Below, piece after piece: positions 14,666 through 27,212 of a DNA stretch of 32,000 bases (position 1 is the stretch's first letter; the number at the start of each line of letters is the position of its first letter). Below the pieces are notes generated by a model. It ran no database searches, was not told where the DNA came from, and saw nothing but the letters and a program-made list of their open reading frames with translations. The stretch comes from Wallemia ichthyophaga EXF-994 (Eukaryota > Fungi > Basidiomycota). The stretch spans positions 150,001 to 182,000 of the forward strand of contig NW_008806284.1 of NCBI RefSeq assembly GCF_000400465.1. The letters run 5' to 3'. The position numbers and the translations under genes are program-made.

Positions 14666-15507
14666 ATGAATATGGACTATTATACCACGTGCAACACTCT
14701 TCTCAAGGTATTCTGGGTTCTCGGGCCATTTGCTTTATTCTACGATGCCCCATTTGGAAGATTTGGGGATGGTGCTAGCAGGTTTAGCCTGAATGGTGGG
14801 TATGGGTGTGGTTTACTCTCCTCTAACCAGCCACAGGCAGAATTACATGGTTTATAATGGAGTTGCTGTCGCCGCTGTCTTTCGTAGCAGCTGTGGGCAC
14901 TAGTGTTAGTACTCCACTCAACACCCTTCAAACCACAGCCACAGCCCTCTTCCTCGCACATTACCTCAATAGAGCTGTAATCTACCCACTTCTGAGCCCC
15001 TCTTCATCCCCATCCCACTTGCTGGTACTTGTATCTGCAGCCACATTCAACATAGCCAATGGCAGCCTGCAGGGGAAATATATAGCCGAACTAGATGTTT
15101 TTGATGGATTCGGCCGCATTGGTGTATTTGGAATACTCCTTACGCTGCTTGGATTCGCTGGAAACGTCTACCACGATTCAATACTCTTCAAGATAAAGAG
15201 GGAGTGTAACGGCGGCTATGAAATTCCCCAGCGTGGCCTATTCAAACATATCAGCTATCCAAATTACTTTTGGTGGGTGCTGTGTGTTTACCAGGTTACG
15301 TCACTAACCAACACAACCAGCGAATGGATCGAATGGTCGGGATACGCACTATTCACCCACTCTACAAGCACAAAAGATCCTCCAATCATGTTCATAATCG
15401 CTCTCCTCGCTACAATGGCCCCACGCGCATACAAAGGTCATCAGTGGTACAAATCCAACTTCAAGTACCCAGAATCGCGCAAGATTGTAATCCCGTGGCT
15501 CTTTTAA
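14666..15507 (+). CDS. 3-oxo-5-alpha-steroid 4-dehydrogenase (SRD5A/DET2-like) membrane reductase, 250 aa; introns 14796-14836, 15273-15320
   Basis: Spliced protein has APFGRF, LNGRITWFIMELLSP, HYLNRAVIYP, FNIANGSLQ, NVYHDSIL, YEIPQRGLFKHISYPNYFCEWIEW and PRAYKGHQWYKSNF-KYPESRKIVIPWLF, the SRD5A1/2 pattern. Confidence 0.9.
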
Positions 15508-15592: not shown

Positions 15593-17182
15593 ATGGCTGT
15601 GCCAGTTGAAAAAGAGGAGGCTGCTGCTAATACGCAGGCTCCCACTCAAACTACCCCGCCAAATCTCCTCAGCGCGCCTCCTTCCCGCTTCGAGAAGCCA
15701 GCCGGCGTAAATACGACAAAGTGGGCAAACGCAGCTCAGGCGCACACCCACAGCTAACAACTCCGCAGCTTTCCAGGACATGCCAATCCGCCACTTCCTA
15801 TCGAGGGCAACGGCTACTTCAGCAATGCGCAATTCATCGCTCTTATCATCGCTGTGCCATACTTGCTCAAGCGCTTGATTCCCTACTTTAACACTGGCTT
15901 CAAGACCTACGTATTCCTCTTCATCCTCACTGGTCCCTTCTCCGCTATCGCGTATTGGACTGTCATGTCCACCTACGGTCCACGCAAGAACGACAAGGTG
16001 GCCCTTCCTAACCGTCCAATTGAAGAATACCTCGATATCAAGGACCCTGAAATGAAGCAGCACTTCCACGGCCACAACAAGATCAATTACCAGCAATTTC
16101 ACGACGCTTACTTTGAAGGCAAAATCGATGTAAAGGGCGACATGCTCGACACCCTCGAATACCGCCACGACTGGGCAACCTTCAACTTCACCCCTAAACT
16201 CTTCAAGTATGTTGTTTTCAAGATGCTCCCTGACGTCATCTTCCACTCCCAATCACAAGACGAAGATCAGATCCAGGATGTGTACGACCGCGGTGATGAC
16301 TTCTACGAATGGTTCCTCGGCCCCCGTATGGTATACACTAGTGGCATGGTTCGCGACACCACCCGCGCTGAGACACTCGAAGAGCTCCAGGACAACAAGC
16401 TCAGTATGGTATGCGAGAAGCTAGACTTGCAGAAGGGTGATAGGATGCTTGATGTGGGATGTGGATGGGGCACTCTCGCAGCGTTCGCTGCTAAAAACTT
16501 TGATGCGGACGTCACTGGAATCACACTCTCCAAGAACCAGGCGGCCTTTGGTAACGAACGTATAGCAAAGAATGGCATTTCCTCTGAGCAGGCTAGGGTG
16601 CTCAATAAGGACTACCGTGATATCCCACGCAACACTTTCAATAAAATCAGCTGCCTCGAGATGGCTGAGCATGTCGGTATTCGTCGCTACGCCTCTTTCT
16701 TGAATGACATTTACAACCTCCTCGACGACGACGGCGTGATGGTTTTCCAGGTTGCTGGATTGCGTCCTCATTGGCAGTACGAGGATCTCGTCTGGGGGTT
16801 GTTTATGAACGAGTACATCTTCCCTGGTGCTGACGCATCTTGCTCGCTCGGCTGGGTCGTCAATCAGCTTGAAAACGCTGGTTTCGAGGTAAAATCGATC
16901 GATGTTCTCGGTGTGCACTACTCGGTCACTATATTGAGATGGTACAATAACTGGATCGCCAATAAGGACAAGGTGATAGAGAAGTACGGTGAGAAGTGGT
17001 TTAGAATCTGGACATTCTTCCTCGCTTCCTCAATTATCATTGCCAGGAACGGCGGGTCGTCGGTGTTCCAGATTACCGTACATAAGAACCTCAACGCTAC
17101 GCGTCGTGTCGATGGCATTGCTAGCCACCACGCTCCTATGAACCGGTTCAAACCATCTTATGCGTCTGTGGCTTCGGAGTAG
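15593..17182 (+). CDS. MTS1: Sphingolipid C9-methyltransferase (cyclopropane fatty acid synthase family), 513 aa; intron 15721-15768
   Basis: N-terminal TM hairpin; DVYDRGDDFYEWFLGPRMVYTSG, SAM motif MLDVGCGWGTL, CLEMAEHVG, WGLFMNEYIFPGADASC, and QITVHKNLNATRRV. Confidence 0.92.
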
Positions 17183-17277: not shown

Positions 17278-18621
17278 TCATTTATGCACCAATCCATCAC
17301 ACCATTTGAATATATCCTCCCATATCTCACTCCTCTGACTTTCATTCCAGTAGCCCAAGATGAGAAGATCGTGTACACCATCTGTGGCGACATTAGTAGT
17401 GAGATCTACTTTATTGCGTTCCATGCGCTCCACTAGGACCTTTATCTCATCTTCCAGCCGCTCGGCAGTACCGTAAGAGACAAAAGCGGGCGGGAACTTG
17501 TCGAAGAGGTCCTCCTCATCCTTGAGGTGCTGTGACGATGGACTGATGTACGGTGAGTGTACGGATATGTGCTGCGGCAGAATACTGTGCCTGAGGCTCT
17601 TCCTTCGCTTGTCGTCTCCTCGCTGCTTGAACAGAGATTTGTTGATGAATGTATGAGATTGTTGTTGTGTGCAAGTGGGGCAGCCTTGCCCGTTTCCGGC
17701 CGTACATCCGATGAAGGACTCAATTATGATAGCGCGCGGCATTGGCGTGTCCATGAGATAGTCAGCCCCTGCATTCGGACGCTTCCTCTTAGCAACTGGA
17801 TCGAATGGGTAGCTGAAAGAAGGATCACACCATGGCGATAGCAGTAGTAGGCCGGCTGGTGTATCATGCAATCTCTCATCGCGTATAAATCTCCCCAATG
17901 CCAACGCAAGATTTCCACCGGCGGAATCACCAATAATCACTATCCGCGAAGGAGGCACTTTGCGTTGGTTGATGAGATTGTCAAAAACACTGGCAACATC
18001 GAGCAGCGCACCGGGAAATGCACTGTGATGGATAAGTCGATATTCCACAGAGTGTATCTCGAGAAAAGACCCTGCCTCCATTAGCCGCTTCGGGATGATG
18101 GACGTTGAACAGTTCTCGTCGGCGGACATGTGCACATAAGCACCCCCGTGTATAGCAATACCCACTAGAGGGAGAGTGGCAGATTCCATCTCAGCGCCAT
18201 TGCGATCCCGATCGCGCTCATCCTCACGGTCGTCATATGTCTTATCGTGGCGATGACGCGGCCAAATGTATGTACCCACTTTGGAATGGGTATCCTGGCC
18301 ATCTACATCGAGCACTCCTATCTGCTTCTCGATGGGCAATGTTGGTACGAATTTGAAGTAGGTGTGTTTGCCATGCCTGCCAAATGAGAAAGGGTCCTTC
18401 ACATGGAAAGAGAGGTTTGAAAGCTCAGTCATTCTGTGCATCCTCTGTAGAAACTTGACAGATATGGCTTGCATAATACTCCATGTAGGGCGTGGTCGGT
18501 TACGCTTGGACAGGAAGGTGACAGCATGGATAGGCACCATCAGCAGCGCGACAGAGACCATGTAAGCGCAGTAGAATACGCGCATTACGCTCCCCGAGTA
18601 CTTCAAATGGGGGTGGCGCAT
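17278..18621 (-). CDS. Hormone-sensitive-lipase-family alpha/beta hydrolase (esterase/lipase), about 447 aa, intronless
   Basis: Oxyanion motif HGGAYV, nucleophile IGDSAGGNLAL, LLLSPWCD, acid region GTAERLEDE, catalytic His in DGVHD; N-terminal hydrophobic segment. The ORF-track start (18669) is a TTG; the first ATG is at 18621. Confidence 0.9.
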   Translation of the reverse strand: MRHPHLKYSGSVMRVFYCAYMVSVALLMVPIHAVTFLSKRNRPRPTWSIMQAISVKFLQRMHRMTELSNLSFHVKDPFSFGRHGKHTYFKFVPTLPIEKQIGVLDVDGQDTHSKVGTYIWPRHRHDKTYDDREDERDRDRNGAEMESATLPLVGIAIHGGAYVHMSADENCSTSIIPKRLMEAGSFLEIHSVEYRLIHHSAFPGALLDVASVFDNLINQRKVPPSRIVIIGDSAGGNLALALGRFIRDERLHDTPAGLLLLSPWCDPSFSYPFDPVAKRKRPNAGADYLMDTPMPRAIIIESFIGCTAGNGQGCPTCTQQQSHTFINKSLFKQRGDDKRRKSLRHSILPQHISVHSPYISPSSQHLKDEEDLFDKFPPAFVSYGTAERLEDEIKVLVERMERNKVDLTTNVATDGVHDLLILGYWNESQRSEIWEDIFKWCDGLVHK

Positions 18622-18700
18622 TGTTATGACAAACGATGATGATGATTGGGGTGAAAAATGGCGCTCCAAGATTCTGAGTCATTCTTACAAACTCGCACCC

Positions 18701-19678
18701 ATGAGCTCAAACTCAACAAACAATATCAGTAAAGACAAGGTTGCTGAGCTCATATCAGCAAATGAGAAGTACTCCCCAGCTACGTCCTGGCTCGAAGACC
18801 GTTACAGCATCTTCAACAAAGGCGACAACATACAAGGATACATTCAGCAGGAAGGCTTCCAGTTCTACTGGGGGGATCCTATCATTACACAGGGCACTAC
18901 TGGCGATTTCGTAAAGCAGATAATCAACTTGGCTAAGGAGAACAACTGTACGCCTGTATTCTGCGAGGTGTCGGAGGACCTCGAGGAGTTGTTGGCTGGT
19001 GATGATTTTGGATACTCGTGCTTGTCGTGCACACACGAAGACGTCATTGACCCAACTCAAGTAAATCTTGACGTAAAGGATGTTCAGCAGAATGTCCGTC
19101 GGTCGCAACGAGCCGGCGTGACCGTATACGAGCTGAGTGGTGAGCCAACAGAAGAGCAGCACAGGGCCATAGATCAGGGCGTCGACAAGTGGAAAGAGGG
19201 CAGGAAGGGTGAGCAGATCGCCACTGCTTCGATGGATCCTTTCCTCGATTCCACCCATAGACGCTTCCTCGTTGCCCAAGTGGAAGGTAAAATAGTCGGT
19301 ATTCTTATCCTCACCCTCCTTAAAAACCACGGATACCAGATCAAAAATTGCACTTCCTTCCCAGACGCCCCGAAAGGCACATCAGAGAGACTGATTGTGG
19401 AATGCTTGGAGCTGCTTAAGAAGGAAGACAACCACTTTGTCAGTTTTGGGATTAGTGCTAGCGATCACATGTCGCCAGTGAACAACCTCAAGGGCATGCG
19501 CGTAACGTGGCTCAGCGGCACTTACAAGTCAATTCTCAAATCTACAGGAATATTTAAAAGAGCTGACTTTCGTAGCAAGTTCAACGTCAAGCATGATCCA
19601 TTGTATATTTGCTACCCTCAGCATGAATTCGGACTGGATGGTGTACATTCTATCATGAAAGCACTTAAAACCAAGTAA
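18701..19678 (+). CDS. Free-standing DUF2156 / LPG_synthase_C aminoacyl-tRNA transferase domain protein (ErdS-type), about 325 aa (an upstream in-frame ATG at 18626 would give 350 aa)
   Basis: TSWLEDRY, WGDP, VRRSQRAGV, WKEGRKGEQI, DSTHRRFLVA, GYQIK..SFPDAPKGTSERLI, VSFGISA, FRSKF, DPLYICYP. These match my recollection of the fungal DUF2156 (dupli-GNAT) domain of ErdS/MprF. No TM segment and no aaRS domain. Confidence 0.8.
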   Translation: MSSNSTNNISKDKVAELISANEKYSPATSWLEDRYSIFNKGDNIQGYIQQEGFQFYWGDPIITQGTTGDFVKQIINLAKENNCTPVFCEVSEDLEELLAGDDFGYSCLSCTHEDVIDPTQVNLDVKDVQQNVRRSQRAGVTVYELSGEPTEEQHRAIDQGVDKWKEGRKGEQIATASMDPFLDSTHRRFLVAQVEGKIVGILILTLLKNHGYQIKNCTSFPDAPKGTSERLIVECLELLKKEDNHFVSFGISASDHMSPVNNLKGMRVTWLSGTYKSILKSTGIFKRADFRSKFNVKHDPLYICYPQHEFGLDGVHSIMKALKTK

Positions 19679-19879: not shown

Positions 19880-22800
19880 ATGGCAAAAAACGCAAAGTCA
19901 TCTGCAACGGCAGGAAGTGAGTGTAGCTGCCGATATTAACACCACTCTAACGTTACAGCGCGTAAAAAGCAGGCCGCTAAGAAAGGCGAGGGCGAGCAGC
20001 AGCCCACGAAACAGCAGCAACAGCAGCAGGGAAAGAAGAAGTACACAAAGAAGCACGGTATCGGTCAGTCTAAGCCACCGCCACCGCCAAAGAGATACAT
20101 TCCTCCCCCAAAGCCGCCACGCCCTGCTCCAGATCCACTCGAGGCTTGGGGACTGGCGAGTGTCCTCCCAGCGGATTTGGTTGTTATTTTAAAAAGATTC
20201 AGTAAGAAGGACGCCACCACTAAAATTAGAGCTGTCGAAGATCTACAAAGCTGGGTCGCTGACGTCGACAACAGAGAAGGCGGCACAGAGAGCTTAGTGG
20301 TGGCGTTGCCAGTTTGGGTGTGTAGTGGTTTCATTGAAAGCACTGAGCTAACCACTCACAGCTTCACCACCTCCCTTCAATGCTCCTCGCTTCGAATAGA
20401 AGACTGAGGCAGGTTGCCTTGAGCCTCAATTTGGCACTGTCTTCGCCCAACATTAACGACGTTAGATCCAATATGCTCTACACTATTAGCGAATCTAGCT
20501 ACGAGTCCTCGTTGGGCGCGTGGCTGCTTGCTAATCCACAATCATGGCTCAGCAATACCACATTCGAGGAGGTCCCAGAAGGAGACGACCGCATTCAGCT
20601 TCTCGAGGAATATCAACTTGAACCTCTCATTAATTACATCAGCGCAGCTATTCGCTCTCCGTACCTCCTCCTGCCGACTGCTGGTACACCTGGTACACCA
20701 CTCACAGAAGCTAAAAAGGATATAATGGCTGAGCAGGAAGAGAATTACAAGTCTAAAGACGCTCGTATCAAATCAGCTGGTTTGAATGCCTTGGGTTATC
20801 TCATTACGACCATTCCTCAAGGCTTCGACGTGCAAGGACTGCTTAGGGACCTGATTGACTCAGGTGCAATTGCCGAGTGTTTCAATGCTCCCGAGGGTGA
20901 AGAGATTGTCAGGAGGTCTGTTTGGAGTCTTCTTCTACCGCTCTTGAAAAGAGACGAAGGTAAGCTAATCGAAAGCAACCTCCATTCGTTCGCTCCAGTC
21001 ATTATCAACAACGCTTTCAACGAGAATGACTCCACTGTCACATCTGTCATGTTTGATGGTCTGCTAACGTTCCTCCATCGCTTCCCGTCTGCATGGACTA
21101 TCGCAATCGATGAGGAGCAAGATGATAACCAAGATGGGGAGAGGATACCAAAATGTCTTAGCAGTCTGCTCACCTTTTTAGAGCTCGGCTGTAGAGCAAG
21201 TCCACCTCAGGTAGCCTACTCAAGCTTGCTGGTTATTCTCATGACTATGCCAAAGGAATACCTCACTCAATCAACACTATCAAGACTGTTGGTAGCCTTC
21301 TTAGCACCTCTTTACTCAAACATATTCCCTTCACCGCCTGTCCTTCAAGCTAGACATGCTGAGGCTCTTTTGAAGTCAATTACGGAATGTTTGGTGGCGA
21401 TTGTTGCAAATGTAGTTGAGTCAAGAGATACTGGCCTTGAAGTCGCAACAGAGTGGATCAAAGCTATTTGGGAGGCGTTTGTCACTTCACCAACACGTGA
21501 TGCTAAGCTGCTCAAGGCTAACGTTGTCGGTCCTACTCTCCAAAATGCATTTAAAAAACTCCACACAGTTCAGGAGCAGAATCTCGATAGTGCTGTAGAT
21601 ACAGTCGAGGAAATTACATTGGATTCTGAAGACGTCTCAAGAAGCACTGAAGTATTGTGTGAAATGGTGAAATCAGCCGATGGCGCGATTGAAAATAGAT
21701 TTGCAGGTCTTCTAGAGAAATTAGTAAATAATTCGCTCAATGAACAAGCCGAAGCCAATCTCGATGTCATTGTGATTGCTTTGAGAGGCATCGAGTGTAT
21801 CAGCATCATTGAGGGGGTCTTGCAACAGCTCGACGACTTTATCACGGTGACCTTGCCAACTCTTGTCGCTGGCCAGAGCTCATCAGAAGCAACTGACCTG
21901 CTACTTGCCTATATCGCCAAACGCGACAATGGTAATATGATTCAGCAGGCTTGGAAAGGCGTACTTAGTGCTGAACCATCACTCGATGTCGTCGCTAAGC
22001 TTCTAGATGCAAACGCCAATGGTGACCTGGATGGGAAACAACTCGAGGGCGCCAGCACAATGGCTGGAATTGACGAAATGGCCTTGCTCTTGGCCAACAG
22101 GGACATTGAAGGCGATTCAGATCAAGTAGAGAAGCGAGTCATTAACGGTATTCTACAATCAAGTGATAAGTTCATAAGTACAGTAATGCACGGATCCATC
22201 GAGCGTCTCTATATTGATTCTTTCAGAGGCAGTGTTTACTCCAAACTCTATCGCAATTCAAATCACCGTGATGTCAATTTGTCAACTATCAAACATGCAA
22301 GCATCGATGTTCTCGTACAGCTTGCCAAAGAAATATTTATCGAAGCTTACATTGTCAATGAGGACGCAACGGCTAGAGACCTTTGGAGCAGAGTTTATAA
22401 TGTGGAGAAAGTTTTCTCAGCTGTCAAAGATTTCGTTTTTGGCTTGATATCAGATGTGAATGTTTTGGCGGAGTAAGTGGCGGTTATACAATGCTGTTCA
22501 CTTTACTGACCTCCCCCCACAGACCCAAGACGATATTTAATGCATTTTATCAACATTTGATAAAGTATGAGTCTAATGATGAGCACGTGGCTCAACAATT
22601 CATCAATTCCCTTAGCGCTCAATATGATCTTCAACTGGACCTTCCATTGCCCTCTGCCTTGGCCGTTCTTGACGAGCTCGTCCCTCACACCTCCGAGTAC
22701 GATGACACCGCACCAAACCACACCGAGTACGACGAAAGGGGTCACTCAAGTCTCATTAGGAATATCGAAGGGCTTCTCAGCTACTTTACGGCTGATATGT

Positions 22801-25031
22801 CAATTGCTGTGAACAACGCAAGTGCACTCATCAACTTTTTCGGCGCATTGAGACTCGTTGAGGATGAGATGAGCATTAGAGGATGCACTAGTGCTTTCTC
22901 TAAAGAGAGCGATATGGAATCATTGGCAACTATACACGATTCTCTGAGGACGAGCGTTGCTTACACACTCTACAAAATTAGTTCCAGTGTCGATCAAAGT
23001 GCACTGATAAGGGTAATTAGGAGTGGCGGAGAGGCAAATGATTCACTTTCAGTGGCTCTCAAAACACTTTATTACGATGGAAGAGTGAACAGCCTGAGAC
23101 TCTTCCGCGACATGCTTCATGGCGTGCTCCAACGTGTTGAGGACGTCGATGGCGACAGGTGGTTGGGTATGACTGGTGAGGAGTATACAAAGGCCAATGG
23201 AGAGCACAGGGCAAAAGCTCTGCTGTTATCTGTCAAATCTTACACCCTGTCTTCACCACGTCTGGCAAGACTGCAGAATGAGATAGCATCCAAACTTACC
23301 AGCATCTCGGCAGCTGATGCCTCAGAACAAGGTTTACCATTGTTGAGATTGCTGATCAGTGCTGCGCCACCATTGGACGCTGAAGAAGGTCTGCTTCCTC
23401 AACAAAGAGCGCTCTATCTGCTTAAGTGCTTGCGCGAGTGGGTAATGAGTGATGAAGATCTAGATGAGGAACTTGACGGCAGATTGTCTGAGTTGTTTAT
23501 TCATCTTGTTCCGGTTATACAAGGAGTCGACGGTTCACACTGGGATTTGATATTCGACTTGGTGGAGGCTAACATTGAGATCGCATCGTTGGACGAGGGC
23601 GTACTACTCTATAACTCGCTTAGACTGTTTGAACAGCTTATGACTCTATCAAAGACCAACTCGGCACTCAGCAACATCTGGAAAGATAGGCGTGCAATTG
23701 CATTTGAGCACCTCCGCACTCTGTTCTTGAGCTTAGGCGACGACAACGGCGTTACATCGACTAGGCCGCGCAATGTATGCGAAGATCTCGTTCTTAAATT
23801 GGTCCAAGCTGTTCCTAAGGATCTTATCTCTGAGGAGAGTTTCGATCCGATGGTCAAGATGCTCAACAGCTACTCTACAGAAGTCCGCAAAGTGGCACAT
23901 AGGTTGTTATACAGACTTATCAAGACTCAAGTTGAGAAAGCAGCAGTGGATAGTGCAGTGGATAGTAGCTACGAAGTTAAACTACCGGAAGTACTAACGG
24001 AGAAAATAAGCGAGAGAATAACTTACTCGATAGACGATGTGGTAAAGAATGAGAATGTCAGAAAGCACGTCTTCTACTTATTGCTGGTGTGGGATGTTAC
24101 ATTCTGTCACTTCAATCACGCTTCTGATGCTATGCGCGCTAAATATAACGAGCAATTCCGTCAAAGTGGTGTCATCGGAAGCGCATTTTTGCCGCTTATT
24201 TTCACTGTGATGGGACTATTTGATAAGAACAAAACGATCGATTTATCCGGATACCTGATTGATGAGTTTTACGTACAGTACTACGAAAGCGACGAATACA
24301 CGCCAACTGCTGTACTCGCCGCTTTTGTTTTTTATAAATCATTGAAGTATAGCTCTGGCCATGTTAGGGCGTGGTGGACATCTAACCAGAACAGACAACT
24401 GTCTATGGTAGTTAATGGGGTGACGTCAAGGTATTTCAGTCCTCAGATCATACACGAAGAGCTTAAGCAACTGCGTAATCCAGTCTCACTGAAGGAGTTA
24501 CAGACCGAGGCGTTTAGTATAAAGGTTGCGCAGAACGCAAGTGAAGTTACAGCCACTTACATTGTCGATGAGCAGCCGATGGAAATGGGAGTAAAGCTAC
24601 CGCAACTATTCCCGCTTGAGCCGGTTGAGATAAGGAATATAAGGAGAGTTGGCGTCAACGAACGACAATGGAGAGCATGGTTGTTGGCCGTACAGCAAGT
24701 GATTGGCTCACAATCTGGACCTTTATTGGAGGCTTTGAGTTTGTTCAAGAGAAACGTCAGCTTACACTTTGATGGTGTGACTGAGTGTGCCATTTGTTAC
24801 TCGTGGGTGGTACTACTTGTTCTCATAGCCCAACTAACACAGCAAAGTATCGTTCAAACTTCTGATCGCTCGCTGCCATCAAAGAAATGCAAAGTTTGCA
24901 GTAACAAATTCCATGGCGCTTGCTTGTACACGTGGTTCCAATCCTCGACTGTGAGTTTCGATGTCCTGTAGATGGCGAAGCTAACCGAAATACAGTCATC
25001 TACATGTCCGTTGTGTCGTCAAATATGGTAA
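19880..25031 (+). CDS. RKR1: E3 ubiquitin ligase listerin (ribosome quality control), about 1641 aa; introns 19917-19958, 20318-20361, 22473-22522, 24803-24847, 24951-24995
   Basis: MAKNAKSSATAGTRKKQ N-terminus, KRFSKKDATTKIRAVEDL, HEAT/ARM body, RWD (YIVDEQPMEMGVKLPQLFPL), and RING ECAICYS...CKVCSNKFHGACLYTWF...STCPLCR after splicing. Confidence 0.93.
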
Positions 25032-25103: not shown

Positions 25104-27212
25104 ATGATCCCGCGAGGCGCTGGAATAGCGACGAGAGTAAGAAAATAATGTTTGCTAAAGCTTCTGGCTGACAATATTACTAGGGCTGTCTGCGATTACG
25201 GTTACGGCCTTGTGGCAGCGGTTATCAGTCATTGCGGATACAGTTACCGTGGCAACAACTGAGATGGCACGCACATATGTCCAACAGTACACCCAAAATT
25301 GAGGCGAAACAGCCCATCAAAGCACAATCACAGCAAACGGAATCCGTCGAGAAACCAACGAATGATATCACCACGAAGCAGCAGAGACAGATGGACTGGA
25401 ATATAATAAAGTTGCTCATAAAGAATATCTGGCCTAAAGGAGACAACAAGACGAAAGTCCGCGTCAGTTTGGCAGTAGCTCTGCTCATTTCAGGCAAATT
25501 GCTTAATGTGCAAGTGCCATTTTTCTTCAAGAGTATAGTGGATACACTGAATATAGAGCTAGATCCGAGCATGACAGTATGGGCTGTCTGCGGCTCTGCT
25601 ATTGCCGGCTATGGTCTTGCGAGGATTGGATCGACGACATTCAACGAGTTACGTAATGCAGTATTTGCAAATGTAGCACAAAGAGCGATAAGGAGAGTTT
25701 CAGGGAATGTATTTCGTCATCTTCTCAGTCTCGATTTGGGCTTCCACTTGAGCAGACAGACTGGCGGTCTCACTCGTGCCATCGATAGAGGTACAAAGGG
25801 AATTTCATTCTTACTTACATCTATCGTATTTCATATTATACCAACTGCACTCGAAATTTCGATGGTATGTGGAATTTTGTCTTACAAATTTGGACCAAGT
25901 TTCGCTGGTATTACTTTGGCTACTATGCTCGCATATAGTTGGTTCACTATTAGAACAACTTCGTGGCGTATGCGCTTTCGCAAGGAGGCTAATGCGGCTG
26001 ACAATGCTGGTGCAAATGTTGCAATTGACTCGCTGCTCAACTACGAAGCTGTGAAACACTTTAACAATGAAACCCACCAGGCAAAATTGTACGATGGGAC
26101 GTTGAAGAAATACGAGGATGCATCACTTAAAGTTGCAACATCGCTAGCTTATCTTAACAGCGGACAGAATTTCATCTTCTCTACTGCACTGACTGCAATG
26201 ATGGTACTTACTGCACAGAATGTACTCGCTGGAACAATGACGGTTGGAGATTTGGTACTTGTCAACCAACTCGTTTTCCAACTCAGTGTGCCTCTCAATT
26301 TTCTAGGCACAGTCTACCGCGAGTTGAGACAGAGTCTGATAGATATGGAGACACTATTCAATTTACAGTCTGTAGATATAAACGTAAAGTCGAAAGAAAG
26401 TGCGCCTCCTATTCAACTCAAAGGTGGTAACATCAAGTTTGAGAATGTACAGTTTGGATATCACCCAATACGCCCGATATTCAAAGATGTCTCATTTACG
26501 ATCCCAGCTGGGAAAAAGGTAGCAATAGTGGGACCATCAGGTGGAGGAAAGTCAACAGTTTTTAGACTATTGTTTAGGTTCTACGACCCAACATCGGGTA
26601 GAATAACGATAGATGGGCAGCCAATTGAGCAAGTTGATATGGAAAGTCTGAGGAAAGTAATAGGAGTGGTTCCACAGGATACAGCGCTATTCCATGCTGA
26701 CGTAATGCAAAATGTGCGATATGGAAGACTGGATGCTAGTGATGAGCAAGTAAAGGAGGCAGCTCGGAAGGCGCAAATGGGTAAGTTGATAGAGAGTCTA
26801 CCTGAAGGGTGGAGTACGAGTGTTGGGGAGAGAGGAATGATGATTAGTGGAGGAGAAAAGCAGCGACTGGCGATTGCGAGGGTCTTTTTGAAGGATGCGC
26901 CAATATTATTCTTCGATGAGGCAACTTCGTCGTTGGATACAGAGACCGAGAGAGAGTTGCTGAACAATATCAAGGAGGTGCTTGGCAGCAAAGCGCGTAC
27001 GAGTGTGTTTGTGGCACATAGACTTAGAACGGTCTCAGATTCAGGTGAGTGAGTTTGAGTGTCAAGTATGTATCGACTAACACGATACAGATCACATAAT
27101 AGTACTCAGGGACGGATATGTGGATGAGGAAGGAGATCATGATGAGCTGATGAAGCGTGGAGGAACATATTATAAAATGTGGCAGCAGCAGCAGCTTGAG
27201 CAAGCAGTTTGA
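25104..27212 (+). CDS. ATM1: Mitochondrial ABC half-transporter Atm1 (ABCB7), about 671 aa; introns 25137-25183, 27045-27090
   Basis: Arg-rich presequence; [20 protein letters not shown], Walker [10 protein letters not shown], signature [26 protein letters not shown]. Confidence 0.96.

What the first reader, a model, noticed from the sequence alone, without database searches (positions are those of the whole stretch)
17278..19678. Free-standing ErdS-type aminoacyl-tRNA transferase (DUF2156) paired head-to-head with an HSL hydrolase: candidate new lipid aminoacylation/deacylation module
Seen: an intronless ~325-aa DUF2156-like gene and an intronless HGG/GDSAG hydrolase diverge from a 79-nt spacer (only 4 nt if the 18626 ATG is used). 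The hydrolase occupies the space upstream, so no aspartyl-tRNA synthetase exon can be fused, and no TM helix is present. Established: in Aspergillus, ErdS (an AspRS-DUF2156 fusion) makes ergosteryl-aspartate from Asp-tRNA, and the neighbouring alpha/beta hydrolase ErdH removes it; ascomycete ErgS is a free-standing DUF2156 that makes ergosteryl-glycine; bacterial MprF uses the same domain on phospholipids. Inference: this is a synthase/hydrolase pair with a third architecture. It is a soluble synthetase-less transferase that must take aminoacyl-tRNA from the general pool, and its amino acid donor and lipid acceptor may differ from Asp/Gly and ergosterol.
Basis: partly seen in the sequence, partly recalled or inferred. 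Interest (0 to 1): 0.88.

Follow-up and report, generated by a model that had tools for sequence, protein, structure and literature searches.

The report
Basidiomycete tRNA-dependent lipid transferase with esterase partner
In the salt-loving fungus Wallemia ichthyophaga, a stand-alone relative of the enzyme that uses charged tRNA to attach aspartate to ergosterol sits head-to-head with an esterase gene; the same pair occurs in distantly related red yeasts, which suggests an undescribed cycle that adds an amino acid to a sterol and removes it again.

Summary
Window 17278-18621(-) encodes a 447-aa HSL-type esterase (HGG, GDSAGG, conserved Glu and His). Window 18701-19678(+) encodes a 325-aa free-standing DUF2156 aminoacyl-tRNA transferase. 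They diverge from a 79-nt spacer, and the 32-kb window holds no AspRS sequence.

- **Transferase.** It belongs to the fungal ErdS-like lineage (E 2e-37 to the ErdS structure, 1e-4 to MprF). It keeps the ErdS CCA-pocket and most sterol-pocket residues.
- **Clade.** It falls in a free-standing clade found across Basidiomycota, outside the ErdS clade. That clade has Ala where ErdS has its proposed general base, His795.
- **Architecture.** "Free-standing" is not a new architecture, because ErgS already is. I could not test orthology to ErgS.
- **Hydrolase.** It is not an ErdH orthologue (33 bits, against at least 158 bits for Say1-like relatives). It belongs to a Say1-related subfamily with an N-terminal hydrophobic helix.
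- **Pairing.** The divergent pair is present in three Wallemia species and in all three Microbotryomycetes species examined, with otherwise different neighbours. It is unlinked in the Agaricomycetes examined.

Most likely this is a steryl-amino-acid synthase/esterase module with an unknown amino acid. I rate it a new variant of a known kind and a good experimental lead. No function has been shown.

The parts
17278..18621 (-). Esterase gene, 447 aa, HSL / Abhydrolase_3 family, Say1-related subfamily. Probable partner hydrolase.
   Evidence: PF07859 85 bits and PF10340 34 bits. 100% identical to W. ichthyophaga P0019. 29% identity end to end (138 bits) with a basidiomycete protein annotated as steryl acetyl hydrolase. 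HSL fold, TM about 0.74 normalised to the target.
18517..18591 (-). N-terminal hydrophobic helix of the esterase (residues about 11-35), a probable membrane anchor.
   Evidence: Kyte-Doolittle 19-mer mean 1.95. Predicted helix 11-35. The region and the following RPRPxWS motif are conserved across the family.
18142..18150 (-). HGG oxyanion-hole motif of the esterase.
   Evidence: Translation. Invariant in 14 family members.
17914..17931 (-). GDSAGG nucleophile elbow (Ser233).
   Evidence: Translation. Invariant.
17371..17463 (-). Segment from the invariant AERLE motif (Glu387, probable catalytic acid) to the invariant His417-Asp418.
   Evidence: Translation. A386, E387, R388, L389, H417 and D418 are invariant. 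The assignment of Glu387 as the catalytic acid is inferred from the alignment with Est8.
18622..18700 (.). 79-nt divergent intergenic spacer, a presumed bidirectional promoter.
   Evidence: Both start codons are conserved among three Wallemia species. Short conserved blocks GCTCCAA and CTTA[CA]A lie in the spacer. Promoter function is inferred, not shown.
18701..19678 (+). Free-standing DUF2156 aminoacyl-tRNA transferase gene, 325 aa plus stop ('fDUF-B' clade).
   Evidence: PF09924 76 bits. ErdS ATT domain 9w9e E 1.9e-37. Predicted double-GNAT fold, TM 0.71-0.77 to aaPGS/MprF catalytic domains. Member of the 89%-bootstrap basidiomycete clade.
19076..19111 (+). Inter-GNAT helix equivalent to the positively charged alpha(+) helix of ErdS (KDVQQNVRRSQR).
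   Evidence: Translation. Predicted helix 126-137. Aligns with ErdS R749/K750/R752/R753. R752 and R753 are kept; 749 and 750 are Gln and Asn in Wallemia.
19190..19222 (+). CCA-pocket motif W-x3-RKG-x-Q-I-A. Equivalent to ErdS W785, R789, K790, G791, Q793 and H795, with Ala replacing His795.
   Evidence: Translation. Residue table. ErdS residue roles from PMC13219428.
19568..19579 (+). FRSK motif, equivalent to ErdS F913, R914 (proposed oxyanion stabiliser) and K916.
   Evidence: Translation. Invariant in the clade.

Best explanation
The two genes form a make-and-break module for an aminoacylated lipid, most probably a steryl-3beta-O-amino acid.

The 325-aa protein is a stand-alone aminoacyl-tRNA transferase with a double-GNAT fold. 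It has no synthetase of its own, so it must capture an already charged tRNA from the cytosolic pool. It would bind the CCA end in a pocket whose residues match those of ErdS, and pass the amino acid to the 3beta-hydroxyl of ergosterol held in an ErdS-like pocket.

It belongs to a free-standing clade found across Basidiomycota ('fDUF-B') that is sister to, not inside, the ErdS transferase domains. The clade has Ala in place of the proposed ErdS general base His795, so its chemistry or substrate probably differs in detail. The amino acid is unknown.

The divergently transcribed, probably membrane-anchored, Say1-related esterase would hydrolyse the ester again. This is the role ErdH plays for ErdS, but the esterase was recruited independently from another branch of the same hydrolase family.

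Shown: the domains, folds, residue conservation, clade structure and conserved gene pairing. Inferred: tRNA dependence, the sterol acceptor, hydrolysis of the product by the esterase, and co-regulation.
For: Family and fold:
- PF09924 at 76 bits.
- Best solved relative is the ErdS ATT domain at E 1.9e-37, against MprF at 1e-4.
- The predicted fold matches aaPGS/MprF catalytic domains, TM 0.71-0.77.

Catalytic-site residues (roles from PMC13219428):
- ErdS CCA-pocket residues W785, R789, K790, G791, Q793, F913, R914 and K916 are all present.
- ErdS sterol-pocket residues T643, S644, W645, R649, C728, E731, Q836 and K838 are present.
- W645, C728, Q836, K838 and R914 are shared by ErdS and this clade but differ in the bacterial outgroup.

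No synthetase domain:
- No AspRS sequence in the window.
- No protein with Ala at the His795 position carries an AspRS domain.

Clade:
- The clade has 89% bootstrap support and the ErdS clade 97%.
- The His795 position is Ala in 22 of 23 clade members and His in 27 of 30 ErdS.

Gene pairing:
- The divergent pair occurs in W. ichthyophaga, W. hederae and W. mellicola.
- It also occurs in R. toruloides (two strains), Microbotryomycetes sp. JL201 and Sporobolomyces johnsonii.
- The other neighbours differ between the two groups.
- Every esterase-linked transferase has the Ala.

Esterase:
- Catalytic motifs are intact and invariant.
- Its nearest relatives outside the subfamily carry the Say1 (steryl acetyl hydrolase) Pfam signature.
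- Yeast Say1 removes a 3beta-O-acyl group from sterols (established knowledge, cited in PMC7334510 and PMC8913301).

Selection: the transferase has dN 0.12 with saturated dS.
Against: - There is no biochemical evidence for any step.
- H795A sharply reduces ErdS activity (PMC13219428). A clade with Ala there must work differently, use another acceptor, or be weak.
- Two of the four alpha(+) helix basic residues are lost in Wallemia.
- In the Agaricomycetes examined, the transferase and the esterase are unlinked.
- The esterase subfamily also occurs in Laetiporus, which has a full ErdS that is not next to it. The esterase may therefore serve other substrates.
- The Say1 Pfam match covers only the region around the nucleophile.
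- Wallemia genomes are compact, so short head-to-head spacing alone means little.
Confidence: 0.5

Rival explanations
1. The clade is simply the basidiomycete orthologue of ErgS. The protein makes ergosteryl-glycine from Gly-tRNA, and the esterase is the so far unknown Erg-Gly hydrolase.
For: - Same architecture as ErgS (free-standing, no synthetase; PMC8913301).
- The clade branches outside an ErdS clade that already contains both Ascomycota and Basidiomycota. The duplication therefore predates the split of the two phyla, and an ascomycete counterpart is expected. ErgS is the obvious candidate.
- The JBC paper places one basidiomycete protein (Trichosporon oleaginosus) in its fDUF clade.
Against: - No ErgS sequence could be obtained, so this is untested.
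- ErgS is reported as about 20% identical to the ErdS ATT domain. This clade is 27-33% identical to it.
- In an exhaustive profile search, none of the 30 hits I named and none of the full-length hits I placed in the tree was an ascomycete free-standing protein. These were basidiomycete free-standing proteins, ErdS, an amoebozoan protein or bacterial proteins. Most of the top 150 hits (110 bits or more) were not named.
- The authors scored ErgS absent in the three basidiomycetes they show, a set the text does not name. Schizophyllum commune, used in the group's earlier survey, has two members of this clade.
Confidence: 0.25
2. It is an ErdS that lost its AspRS half. It still makes ergosteryl-aspartate by scavenging Asp-tRNA from the canonical AspRS.
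For: - ErdS is the closest characterised relative.
- The ErdS transferase can use Asp-tRNA from the cellular pool (PMC13219428).
- The divergent synthase/hydrolase layout mirrors erdS/erdH (PMC7334510; Penicillium locus).
Against: - The clade lies outside the 97%-supported ErdS clade and differs at His795.
- The free-standing forms that do look ErdS-derived (Fomitiporia, Phellopilus) keep the His and branch as sister to ErdS (91% bootstrap); Jaminaea also keeps the His but branches basally.
- The partner esterase is not ErdH.
Confidence: 0.12
3. The transferase aminoacylates a non-sterol acceptor, such as a glycerolipid as in bacterial aaPGS, a sphingolipid, or an amine-bearing molecule that needs no general base.
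For: - Loss of the proposed general base His795.
- Bacterial relatives with Tyr or Phe at this position act on glycerolipids. This rests on established knowledge of the MprF family; the residues are.
- In Wallemia the pair lies next to a CMAS-type methyltransferase and a steroid-reductase-family gene.
Against: - The residues that distinguish ErdS from bacterial enzymes in the sterol pocket (W645, C728, Q836, K838) are kept.
- The lipid-gene neighbours are not conserved in red yeasts.
- The partner's nearest relatives are steryl-ester-type hydrolases.
Confidence: 0.15
4. The adjacency has no functional meaning. The esterase is a general Say1-type steryl or other ester hydrolase that merely shares a promoter region with the transferase.
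For: - The two genes are unlinked in the Agaricomycetes examined.
- The esterase subfamily is present in lineages where this transferase clade was not seen, for example Laetiporus.
- The Wallemia genome is compact.
Against: - The same divergent arrangement occurs in seven genomes of two subphyla, in every Pucciniomycotina locus examined, while all other neighbours differ.
- In JL201 two transferase paralogues flank the esterase.
Confidence: 0.2

Closest known systems
ErdS (ergosteryl-3beta-O-L-aspartate synthase, AspRS-DUF2156 fusion; A. fumigatus, PDB 9w9e/9w9f)
   Same: - Closest characterised relative: E 1.9e-37 and about 27% identity over the whole transferase domain.
- Same double-GNAT fold with a linking helix.
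- CCA-pocket residues conserved and most sterol-pocket residues conserved.
- Divergent hydrolase gene next door.
   Different: - No AspRS domain.
- Separate clade (89% against 97% bootstrap).
- Ala instead of the proposed general base His795.
- Only half of the basic residues of the alpha(+) helix in Wallemia.
- The partner hydrolase is a different subfamily.
ErgS (ergosteryl-3beta-O-glycine synthase, free-standing DUF2156 of Ascomycota)
   Same: Free-standing DUF2156 without synthetase or membrane domain, so the aa-tRNA must come from the general pool.
   Different: - Reported only in Ascomycota, plus one Trichosporon.
- About 20% identical to the ErdS ATT domain, against 27-33% here.
- No partner hydrolase is known.
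- No ErgS sequence was available, so I made no direct comparison.
ErdH (ergosteryl-aspartate hydrolase, PF07859)
   Same: Same Pfam family (Abhydrolase_3, HSL type). Same divergent position relative to the transferase gene. Same presumed role.
   Different: - Only 29% identity over 94 residues (28.9 bits), and 33 bits to the family profile.
- ErdH has GFSAGG, a Ser-Asp-His triad, about 337 aa and no Say1 signature.
- This enzyme has GDSAGG, a probable Ser-Glu-His triad, 447 aa and a long N-terminal region with a hydrophobic helix.
Say1 (yeast steryl acetyl hydrolase, PF10340) acting with Atf2
   Same: Pfam Say1_Mug180 signature above the cut-off. End-to-end homology with basidiomycete Say1-like proteins. 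N-terminal hydrophobic helix. Say1 also reverses a 3beta-O-acylation of sterols.
   Different: The Pfam match covers only about 70 residues around the nucleophile. It is a distinct, larger subfamily (450-650 aa). It is paired with a tRNA-dependent transferase rather than an acetyl-CoA transferase.
Bacterial MprF / aaPGS with their aminoacyl-PG hydrolases
   Same: Same catalytic fold (TM 0.71-0.77), the same logic of a synthase plus a hydrolase, and tRNA-dependent lipid aminoacylation.
   Different: No flippase membrane domain. Very low sequence similarity (E 1e-4). The lipid-pocket residues differ and resemble those of ErdS.

Membership tests
DUF2156 / LPG_synthase_C aminoacyl-tRNA transferases (PF09924) | Match to the Pfam model above the gathering score | tested here: met
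   76 bits against a cut-off of 27.5, covering profile positions 18-298 of 298.
DUF2156 / LPG_synthase_C aminoacyl-tRNA transferases (PF09924) | Double-GNAT fold with a linking helix | tested here: met
   AlphaFold model, pLDDT 79.7. Foldseek TM 0.71-0.77 to aaPGS and MprF catalytic domains, then FemX.
ErdS | N-terminal AspRS domain fused to the transferase | tested here: not met
   No AspRS similarity anywhere in the 32-kb window. The divergent esterase gene starts 79 nt upstream.
ErdS | Transferase domain falls inside the ErdS clade | tested here: not met
   Neighbour-joining tree with 200 bootstraps: ErdS clade 97%, this protein in a separate 89% clade. The method is distance-based only.
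ErdS | CCA-pocket residues W785, R789, K790, G791, Q793, F913, R914, K916 | tested here: met
   All eight are identical in the window protein.
ErdS | Proposed general base His795 | tested here: not met
   Ala174 in the window protein. Ala in 22 of 23 clade members, against His in 27 of 30 ErdS.
ErdS | Sterol-pocket residues with a mutational effect (S644, W645, D647, Q836, K838) | tested here: met
   S, W, E (conservative), Q and K respectively.
ErdS | Produces ergosteryl-aspartate | not testable with these tools
   Needs lipid analysis or an enzyme assay.
ErgS | Free-standing DUF2156 without synthetase or membrane domain | tested here: met
   325 aa, a single domain, no TM segment.
ErgS | Falls inside the ErgS (ascomycete fDUF) clade | not tested
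   No ErgS sequence could be retrieved: searches were capped, ErgS was not among the named top-150 profile hits, and the paper's supplement is not held.
ErgS | Uses Gly-tRNA to make ergosteryl-glycine | not testable with these tools
   Needs an enzyme assay.
ErdH | PF07859 alpha/beta hydrolase with an intact catalytic triad | tested here: met
   PF07859 at 85 bits. HGG, GDSAGG, AERLE and HD are invariant. The acid is probably Glu rather than Asp.
ErdH | Divergent neighbour of the transferase gene | tested here: met
   79-nt spacer here. The same layout occurs in six further genomes.
ErdH | Orthology to characterised ErdH | tested here: not met
   28.9 bits over 94 residues against Penicillium ErdH. 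33 bits to the family profile, against at least 158 bits for Say1-like proteins. ErdH lacks the Say1 signature.
Say1 / Mug180 steryl acetyl hydrolases (PF10340) | Match to the Pfam model above the gathering score | tested here: met
   34.3 bits against a cut-off of 21, but only profile positions 170-239 of 374. The R. toruloides orthologue scores 46 bits.
Say1 / Mug180 steryl acetyl hydrolases (PF10340) | Hydrolysis of sterol 3beta-O-esters | not testable with these tools
   Needs an enzyme assay.
MprF | N-terminal multi-pass flippase domain | tested here: not met
   The protein is 325 aa with no membrane segment.

The most novel reading that the evidence does not exclude
Basidiomycota possess a third class of fungal aminoacyl-tRNA transferases. 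It is neither ErdS nor ErgS and lacks the ErdS catalytic His. It would attach an amino acid other than Asp or Gly to ergosterol or another membrane lipid, and it has independently acquired its own Say1-type esterase to reverse the modification. The group of steryl-amino acids would then be wider than two members, and the 'synthase next to hydrolase' design would have evolved at least twice in fungi.
Probability: 0.3. Interest if true: 0.75.

Novelty: new variant of a known kind. Interest (0 to 1): 0.62.

Why it matters
Only two steryl-amino acids are known, Erg-Asp and Erg-Gly. The published view is that free-standing sterol aminoacyl transferases are confined to Ascomycota and that ErdH is the only dedicated hydrolase.

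These data show a free-standing clade across Agaricomycotina, Pucciniomycotina and Wallemiomycetes. The clade has a defining active-site substitution and a different, independently recruited esterase partner.

This gives a directly testable route to a possible new lipid modification in basidiomycetes. The group includes an extreme halophile (Wallemia) and an oleaginous yeast of industrial interest (Rhodotorula toruloides). The clade also bears on whether His795 really is the general base of this enzyme family.

Tried and rejected
- **AspRS exon in the window.** I looked for one by tblastn and found none.
- **ErdH orthology.** I took a genuine ErdH from a Penicillium canescens erdS/erdH locus. 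Orthology is rejected.
- **Basidiomycete ErdS with this esterase.** I checked whether a basidiomycete ErdS (Laetiporus) sits next to this esterase type. It does not.
- **Pairing in Agaricomycetes.** It is not conserved in Schizophyllum, Pisolithus, Ephemerocybe, Vararia or Laetiporus.
- **ErgS sequences.** I could not obtain any for a direct comparison. The word-index searches returned only ErdS-like and basidiomycete proteins. None of the profile-search hits I named or placed in the tree was ErgS-like; most of the top 150 were not named. The JBC supplement is not held. The ErgS question stays open.
- **Literature.** The search found nothing on this clade beyond the three ErdS/ErgS papers.
- **dN/dS for the esterase.** A first estimate was invalid because of an indel between the two species, so I did not use it.
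- **tRNA scan.** The single ARAGORN hit (2589-2671, undefined anticodon) is unrelated and doubtful.
Full report
**What is in the sequence.**
The window comes from Wallemia ichthyophaga: the hydrolase ORF is 100% identical to an annotated protein of that species. Two uninterrupted ORFs diverge from each other.

The minus-strand ORF (17278-18669) matches Pfam Abhydrolase_3 (85 bits) and, more weakly, Say1_Mug180 (34 bits, cut-off 21). The plus-strand ORF (18626-19678) matches LPG_synthase_C/DUF2156 (76 bits) over almost the whole model.

Comparison with W. hederae and W. mellicola fixes the starts. The ATG at 18701 aligns with their start codons, whereas the ATG at 18626 is not conserved. The hydrolase N-terminus MRHPHLKYSGSV from the ATG at 18621 is conserved in W. 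hederae and partly in red-yeast homologues. The public annotation of the hydrolase (427 aa) probably starts 20 codons too late.

A tblastn search with the AspRS half of a Penicillium ErdS finds nothing in the 32 kb (best E 0.35). The transferase half hits 18716-19657 at E 3e-40.

**The transferase.**
Its best solved relative is the transferase domain of A. fumigatus ErdS (9w9e, E 1.9e-37). MprF-type enzymes reach only about 1e-4. An AlphaFold model (pLDDT 79.7) has the double-GNAT architecture and superposes on aaPGS/MprF catalytic domains with TM 0.71-0.77, followed by FemX.

I used the residue roles published for ErdS (PMC13219428).
- All eight CCA-pocket residues (W785, R789, K790, G791, Q793, F913, R914, K916) are identical in the Wallemia protein.
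- The sterol-pocket residues with a mutational effect (S644, W645, D647, Q836, K838) are kept, with one conservative change.
- W645, C728, Q836, K838 and R914 are shared by ErdS and this clade but differ in the bacterial outgroup. This is the main argument for a sterol acceptor.
- The one clear exception is His795, proposed as the general base that activates the sterol hydroxyl. It is Ala in Wallemia.

**A basidiomycete-wide clade.**
Database searches returned free-standing relatives of 320-560 aa:
- Agaricomycetes: Schizophyllum, Pisolithus, Crucibulum, Marasmius, Pholiota, Flammula, Vararia, Hericium, Tulasnella and others.
- Pucciniomycotina: Rhodotorula, Pseudohyphozyma, Phenoliferia, Microbotryomycetes sp.
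- Wallemia: W. hederae, W. mellicola and an unnamed 86%-identical sequence (P0003).

A neighbour-joining tree of the transferase domains (200 bootstraps, Chlamydiae-like bacterial proteins as outgroup) gave these results:
- These proteins form one clade (89%).
- All AspRS-fused ErdS from both Ascomycota and Basidiomycota form another (97%).
- The free-standing proteins of Fomitiporia and Phellopilus are sister to ErdS (91%).
- The Jaminaea protein is more basal.

The His795 position tracks this split:
- Ala in 22 of 23 members of the clade.
- His in 27 of 30 ErdS, and in the Hymenochaetales and Jaminaea proteins.
- No protein with Ala carries an AspRS domain.

The literature held here states that ErgS is absent from Basidiomycota except one Trichosporon. 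It treats stand-alone DUF2156 hits found with ErdS as often truncated ErdS (PMC8913301, PMC7334510). Nothing on this clade was found.

The gene is under strong purifying selection within Wallemia (dN 0.12, dS saturated).

**The hydrolase.**
HGG, GDSAGG, AERLE and His-Asp are invariant in 14 family members, consistent with a Ser-Glu-His triad. The model has the HSL fold plus an N-terminal hydrophobic helix, residues 11-35. A Wallemia-specific loop of about 50 residues is disordered in the model.

It is not an ErdH orthologue:
- A genuine ErdH, read from the divergent erdS/erdH locus of Penicillium canescens, aligns over only 94 residues (28.9 bits).
- ErdH lacks the Say1 signature.
- ErdH scores 33 bits against the family profile, where all 120 listed basidiomycete relatives score at least 158 bits.

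The nearest outgroup consists of basidiomycete proteins of about 400 aa that carry the Say1 signature. Some are annotated as steryl acetyl hydrolase, and they align end to end (29%, 138 bits).

**Is the pairing meaningful?**
The order Steroid_dh, CMAS, hydrolase(-), transferase(+), Ltn1 is kept in W. hederae and W. mellicola. That alone says little in compact genomes.

The decisive point is the Pucciniomycotina. In Rhodotorula toruloides (two strains), Microbotryomycetes sp. JL201 and Sporobolomyces johnsonii, the orthologous hydrolase is again divergent from a free-standing DUF2156 gene. Every one of those genes has the clade's Ala. JL201 has a second paralogue 3.4 kb away. The other neighbours differ entirely from those in Wallemia.

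Against a strict coupling:
- In the Agaricomycetes examined the two genes are unlinked.
- Laetiporus has this hydrolase type and a full ErdS, and neither is adjacent to the other.

**Interpretation.**
The best-supported reading is a synthase/esterase module for an aminoacylated sterol. It works like ErdS/ErdH but is built from a different transferase clade and an independently recruited esterase of the Say1 branch. The transferase must take charged tRNA from the general pool, as ErgS does.

Which amino acid it uses cannot be predicted from sequence. The replacement of His795 implies either a different catalytic arrangement or a different acceptor.

The main open alternative is that the clade is the basidiomycete orthologue of ErgS. 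This would be consistent with a duplication before the split of Ascomycota and Basidiomycota, but I could not retrieve any ErgS sequence to test it. Less likely alternatives are:
- Erg-Asp synthesis by scavenging Asp-tRNA.
- A non-sterol acceptor.
- A functionally meaningless adjacency.

**Verdict.**
This is a new variant of a known kind. It is a solid lead for specialists in tRNA-dependent lipid modification, but function is entirely inferred.

Noticed in passing
window 14857-15507 (+) and 15854-17182 (+): Two lipid-enzyme genes lie directly upstream of the esterase: a 3-oxo-5-alpha-steroid 4-dehydrogenase-family protein and a CMAS-type (cyclopropane / sphingolipid C9-type) methyltransferase. 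This order is kept in W. hederae and W. mellicola but not in red yeasts.
   Followed up: partly
window 18562-18621 (-): The public W. ichthyophaga annotation of the esterase (P0019, 427 aa) appears to start 20 codons too late. The upstream MRHPHLKYSGSV... is conserved in W. hederae and aligns with Microbotryomycetes homologues.
   Followed up: yes
window 18701-19678 (+): No 100%-identical W. ichthyophaga DUF2156 protein came back from the protein database, although the neighbouring esterase did. The transferase gene may be unannotated in the public assemblies of this species.
   Followed up: no
P0225 (Fomitiporia), P0242 (Phellopilus), P0384 (Jaminaea): There is a second kind of free-standing DUF2156 in Basidiomycota. 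It keeps the ErdS His795. The two Hymenochaetales proteins branch as sister to ErdS and the Jaminaea protein more basally. These could be ErdS-derived stand-alone forms.
   Followed up: partly
L014 7832-9621 (-) and 15362-16920 (-): Microbotryomycetes sp. JL201 has two free-standing DUF2156 paralogues flanking the esterase gene, both with Ala at the His795 position.
   Followed up: partly
P0274 (Planoprotostelium fungivorum, 631 aa): An amoebozoan protein with a C-terminal DUF2156 domain and a 290-residue N-terminal region without a Pfam match branches below the fungal clades. DUF2156 transferases are said to be absent from non-fungal eukaryotes.
   Followed up: no
window 17554-17718 (-), esterase residues about 302-356: A Wallemia-specific insertion of about 50 residues, Cys- and Gln-rich then basic (…GNGQGCPTCTQQQSH…KRRKSLRH…). 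It is predicted to be disordered and is also present in W. mellicola.
   Followed up: partly
window 20380-24971 (+) and 25232-27052 (+): Ltn1-type E3 ligase ORFs are followed by an ABC half-transporter. The W. hederae and W. mellicola annotations merge these into one protein of 2200-2300 aa, probably a gene-model fusion.
   Followed up: no
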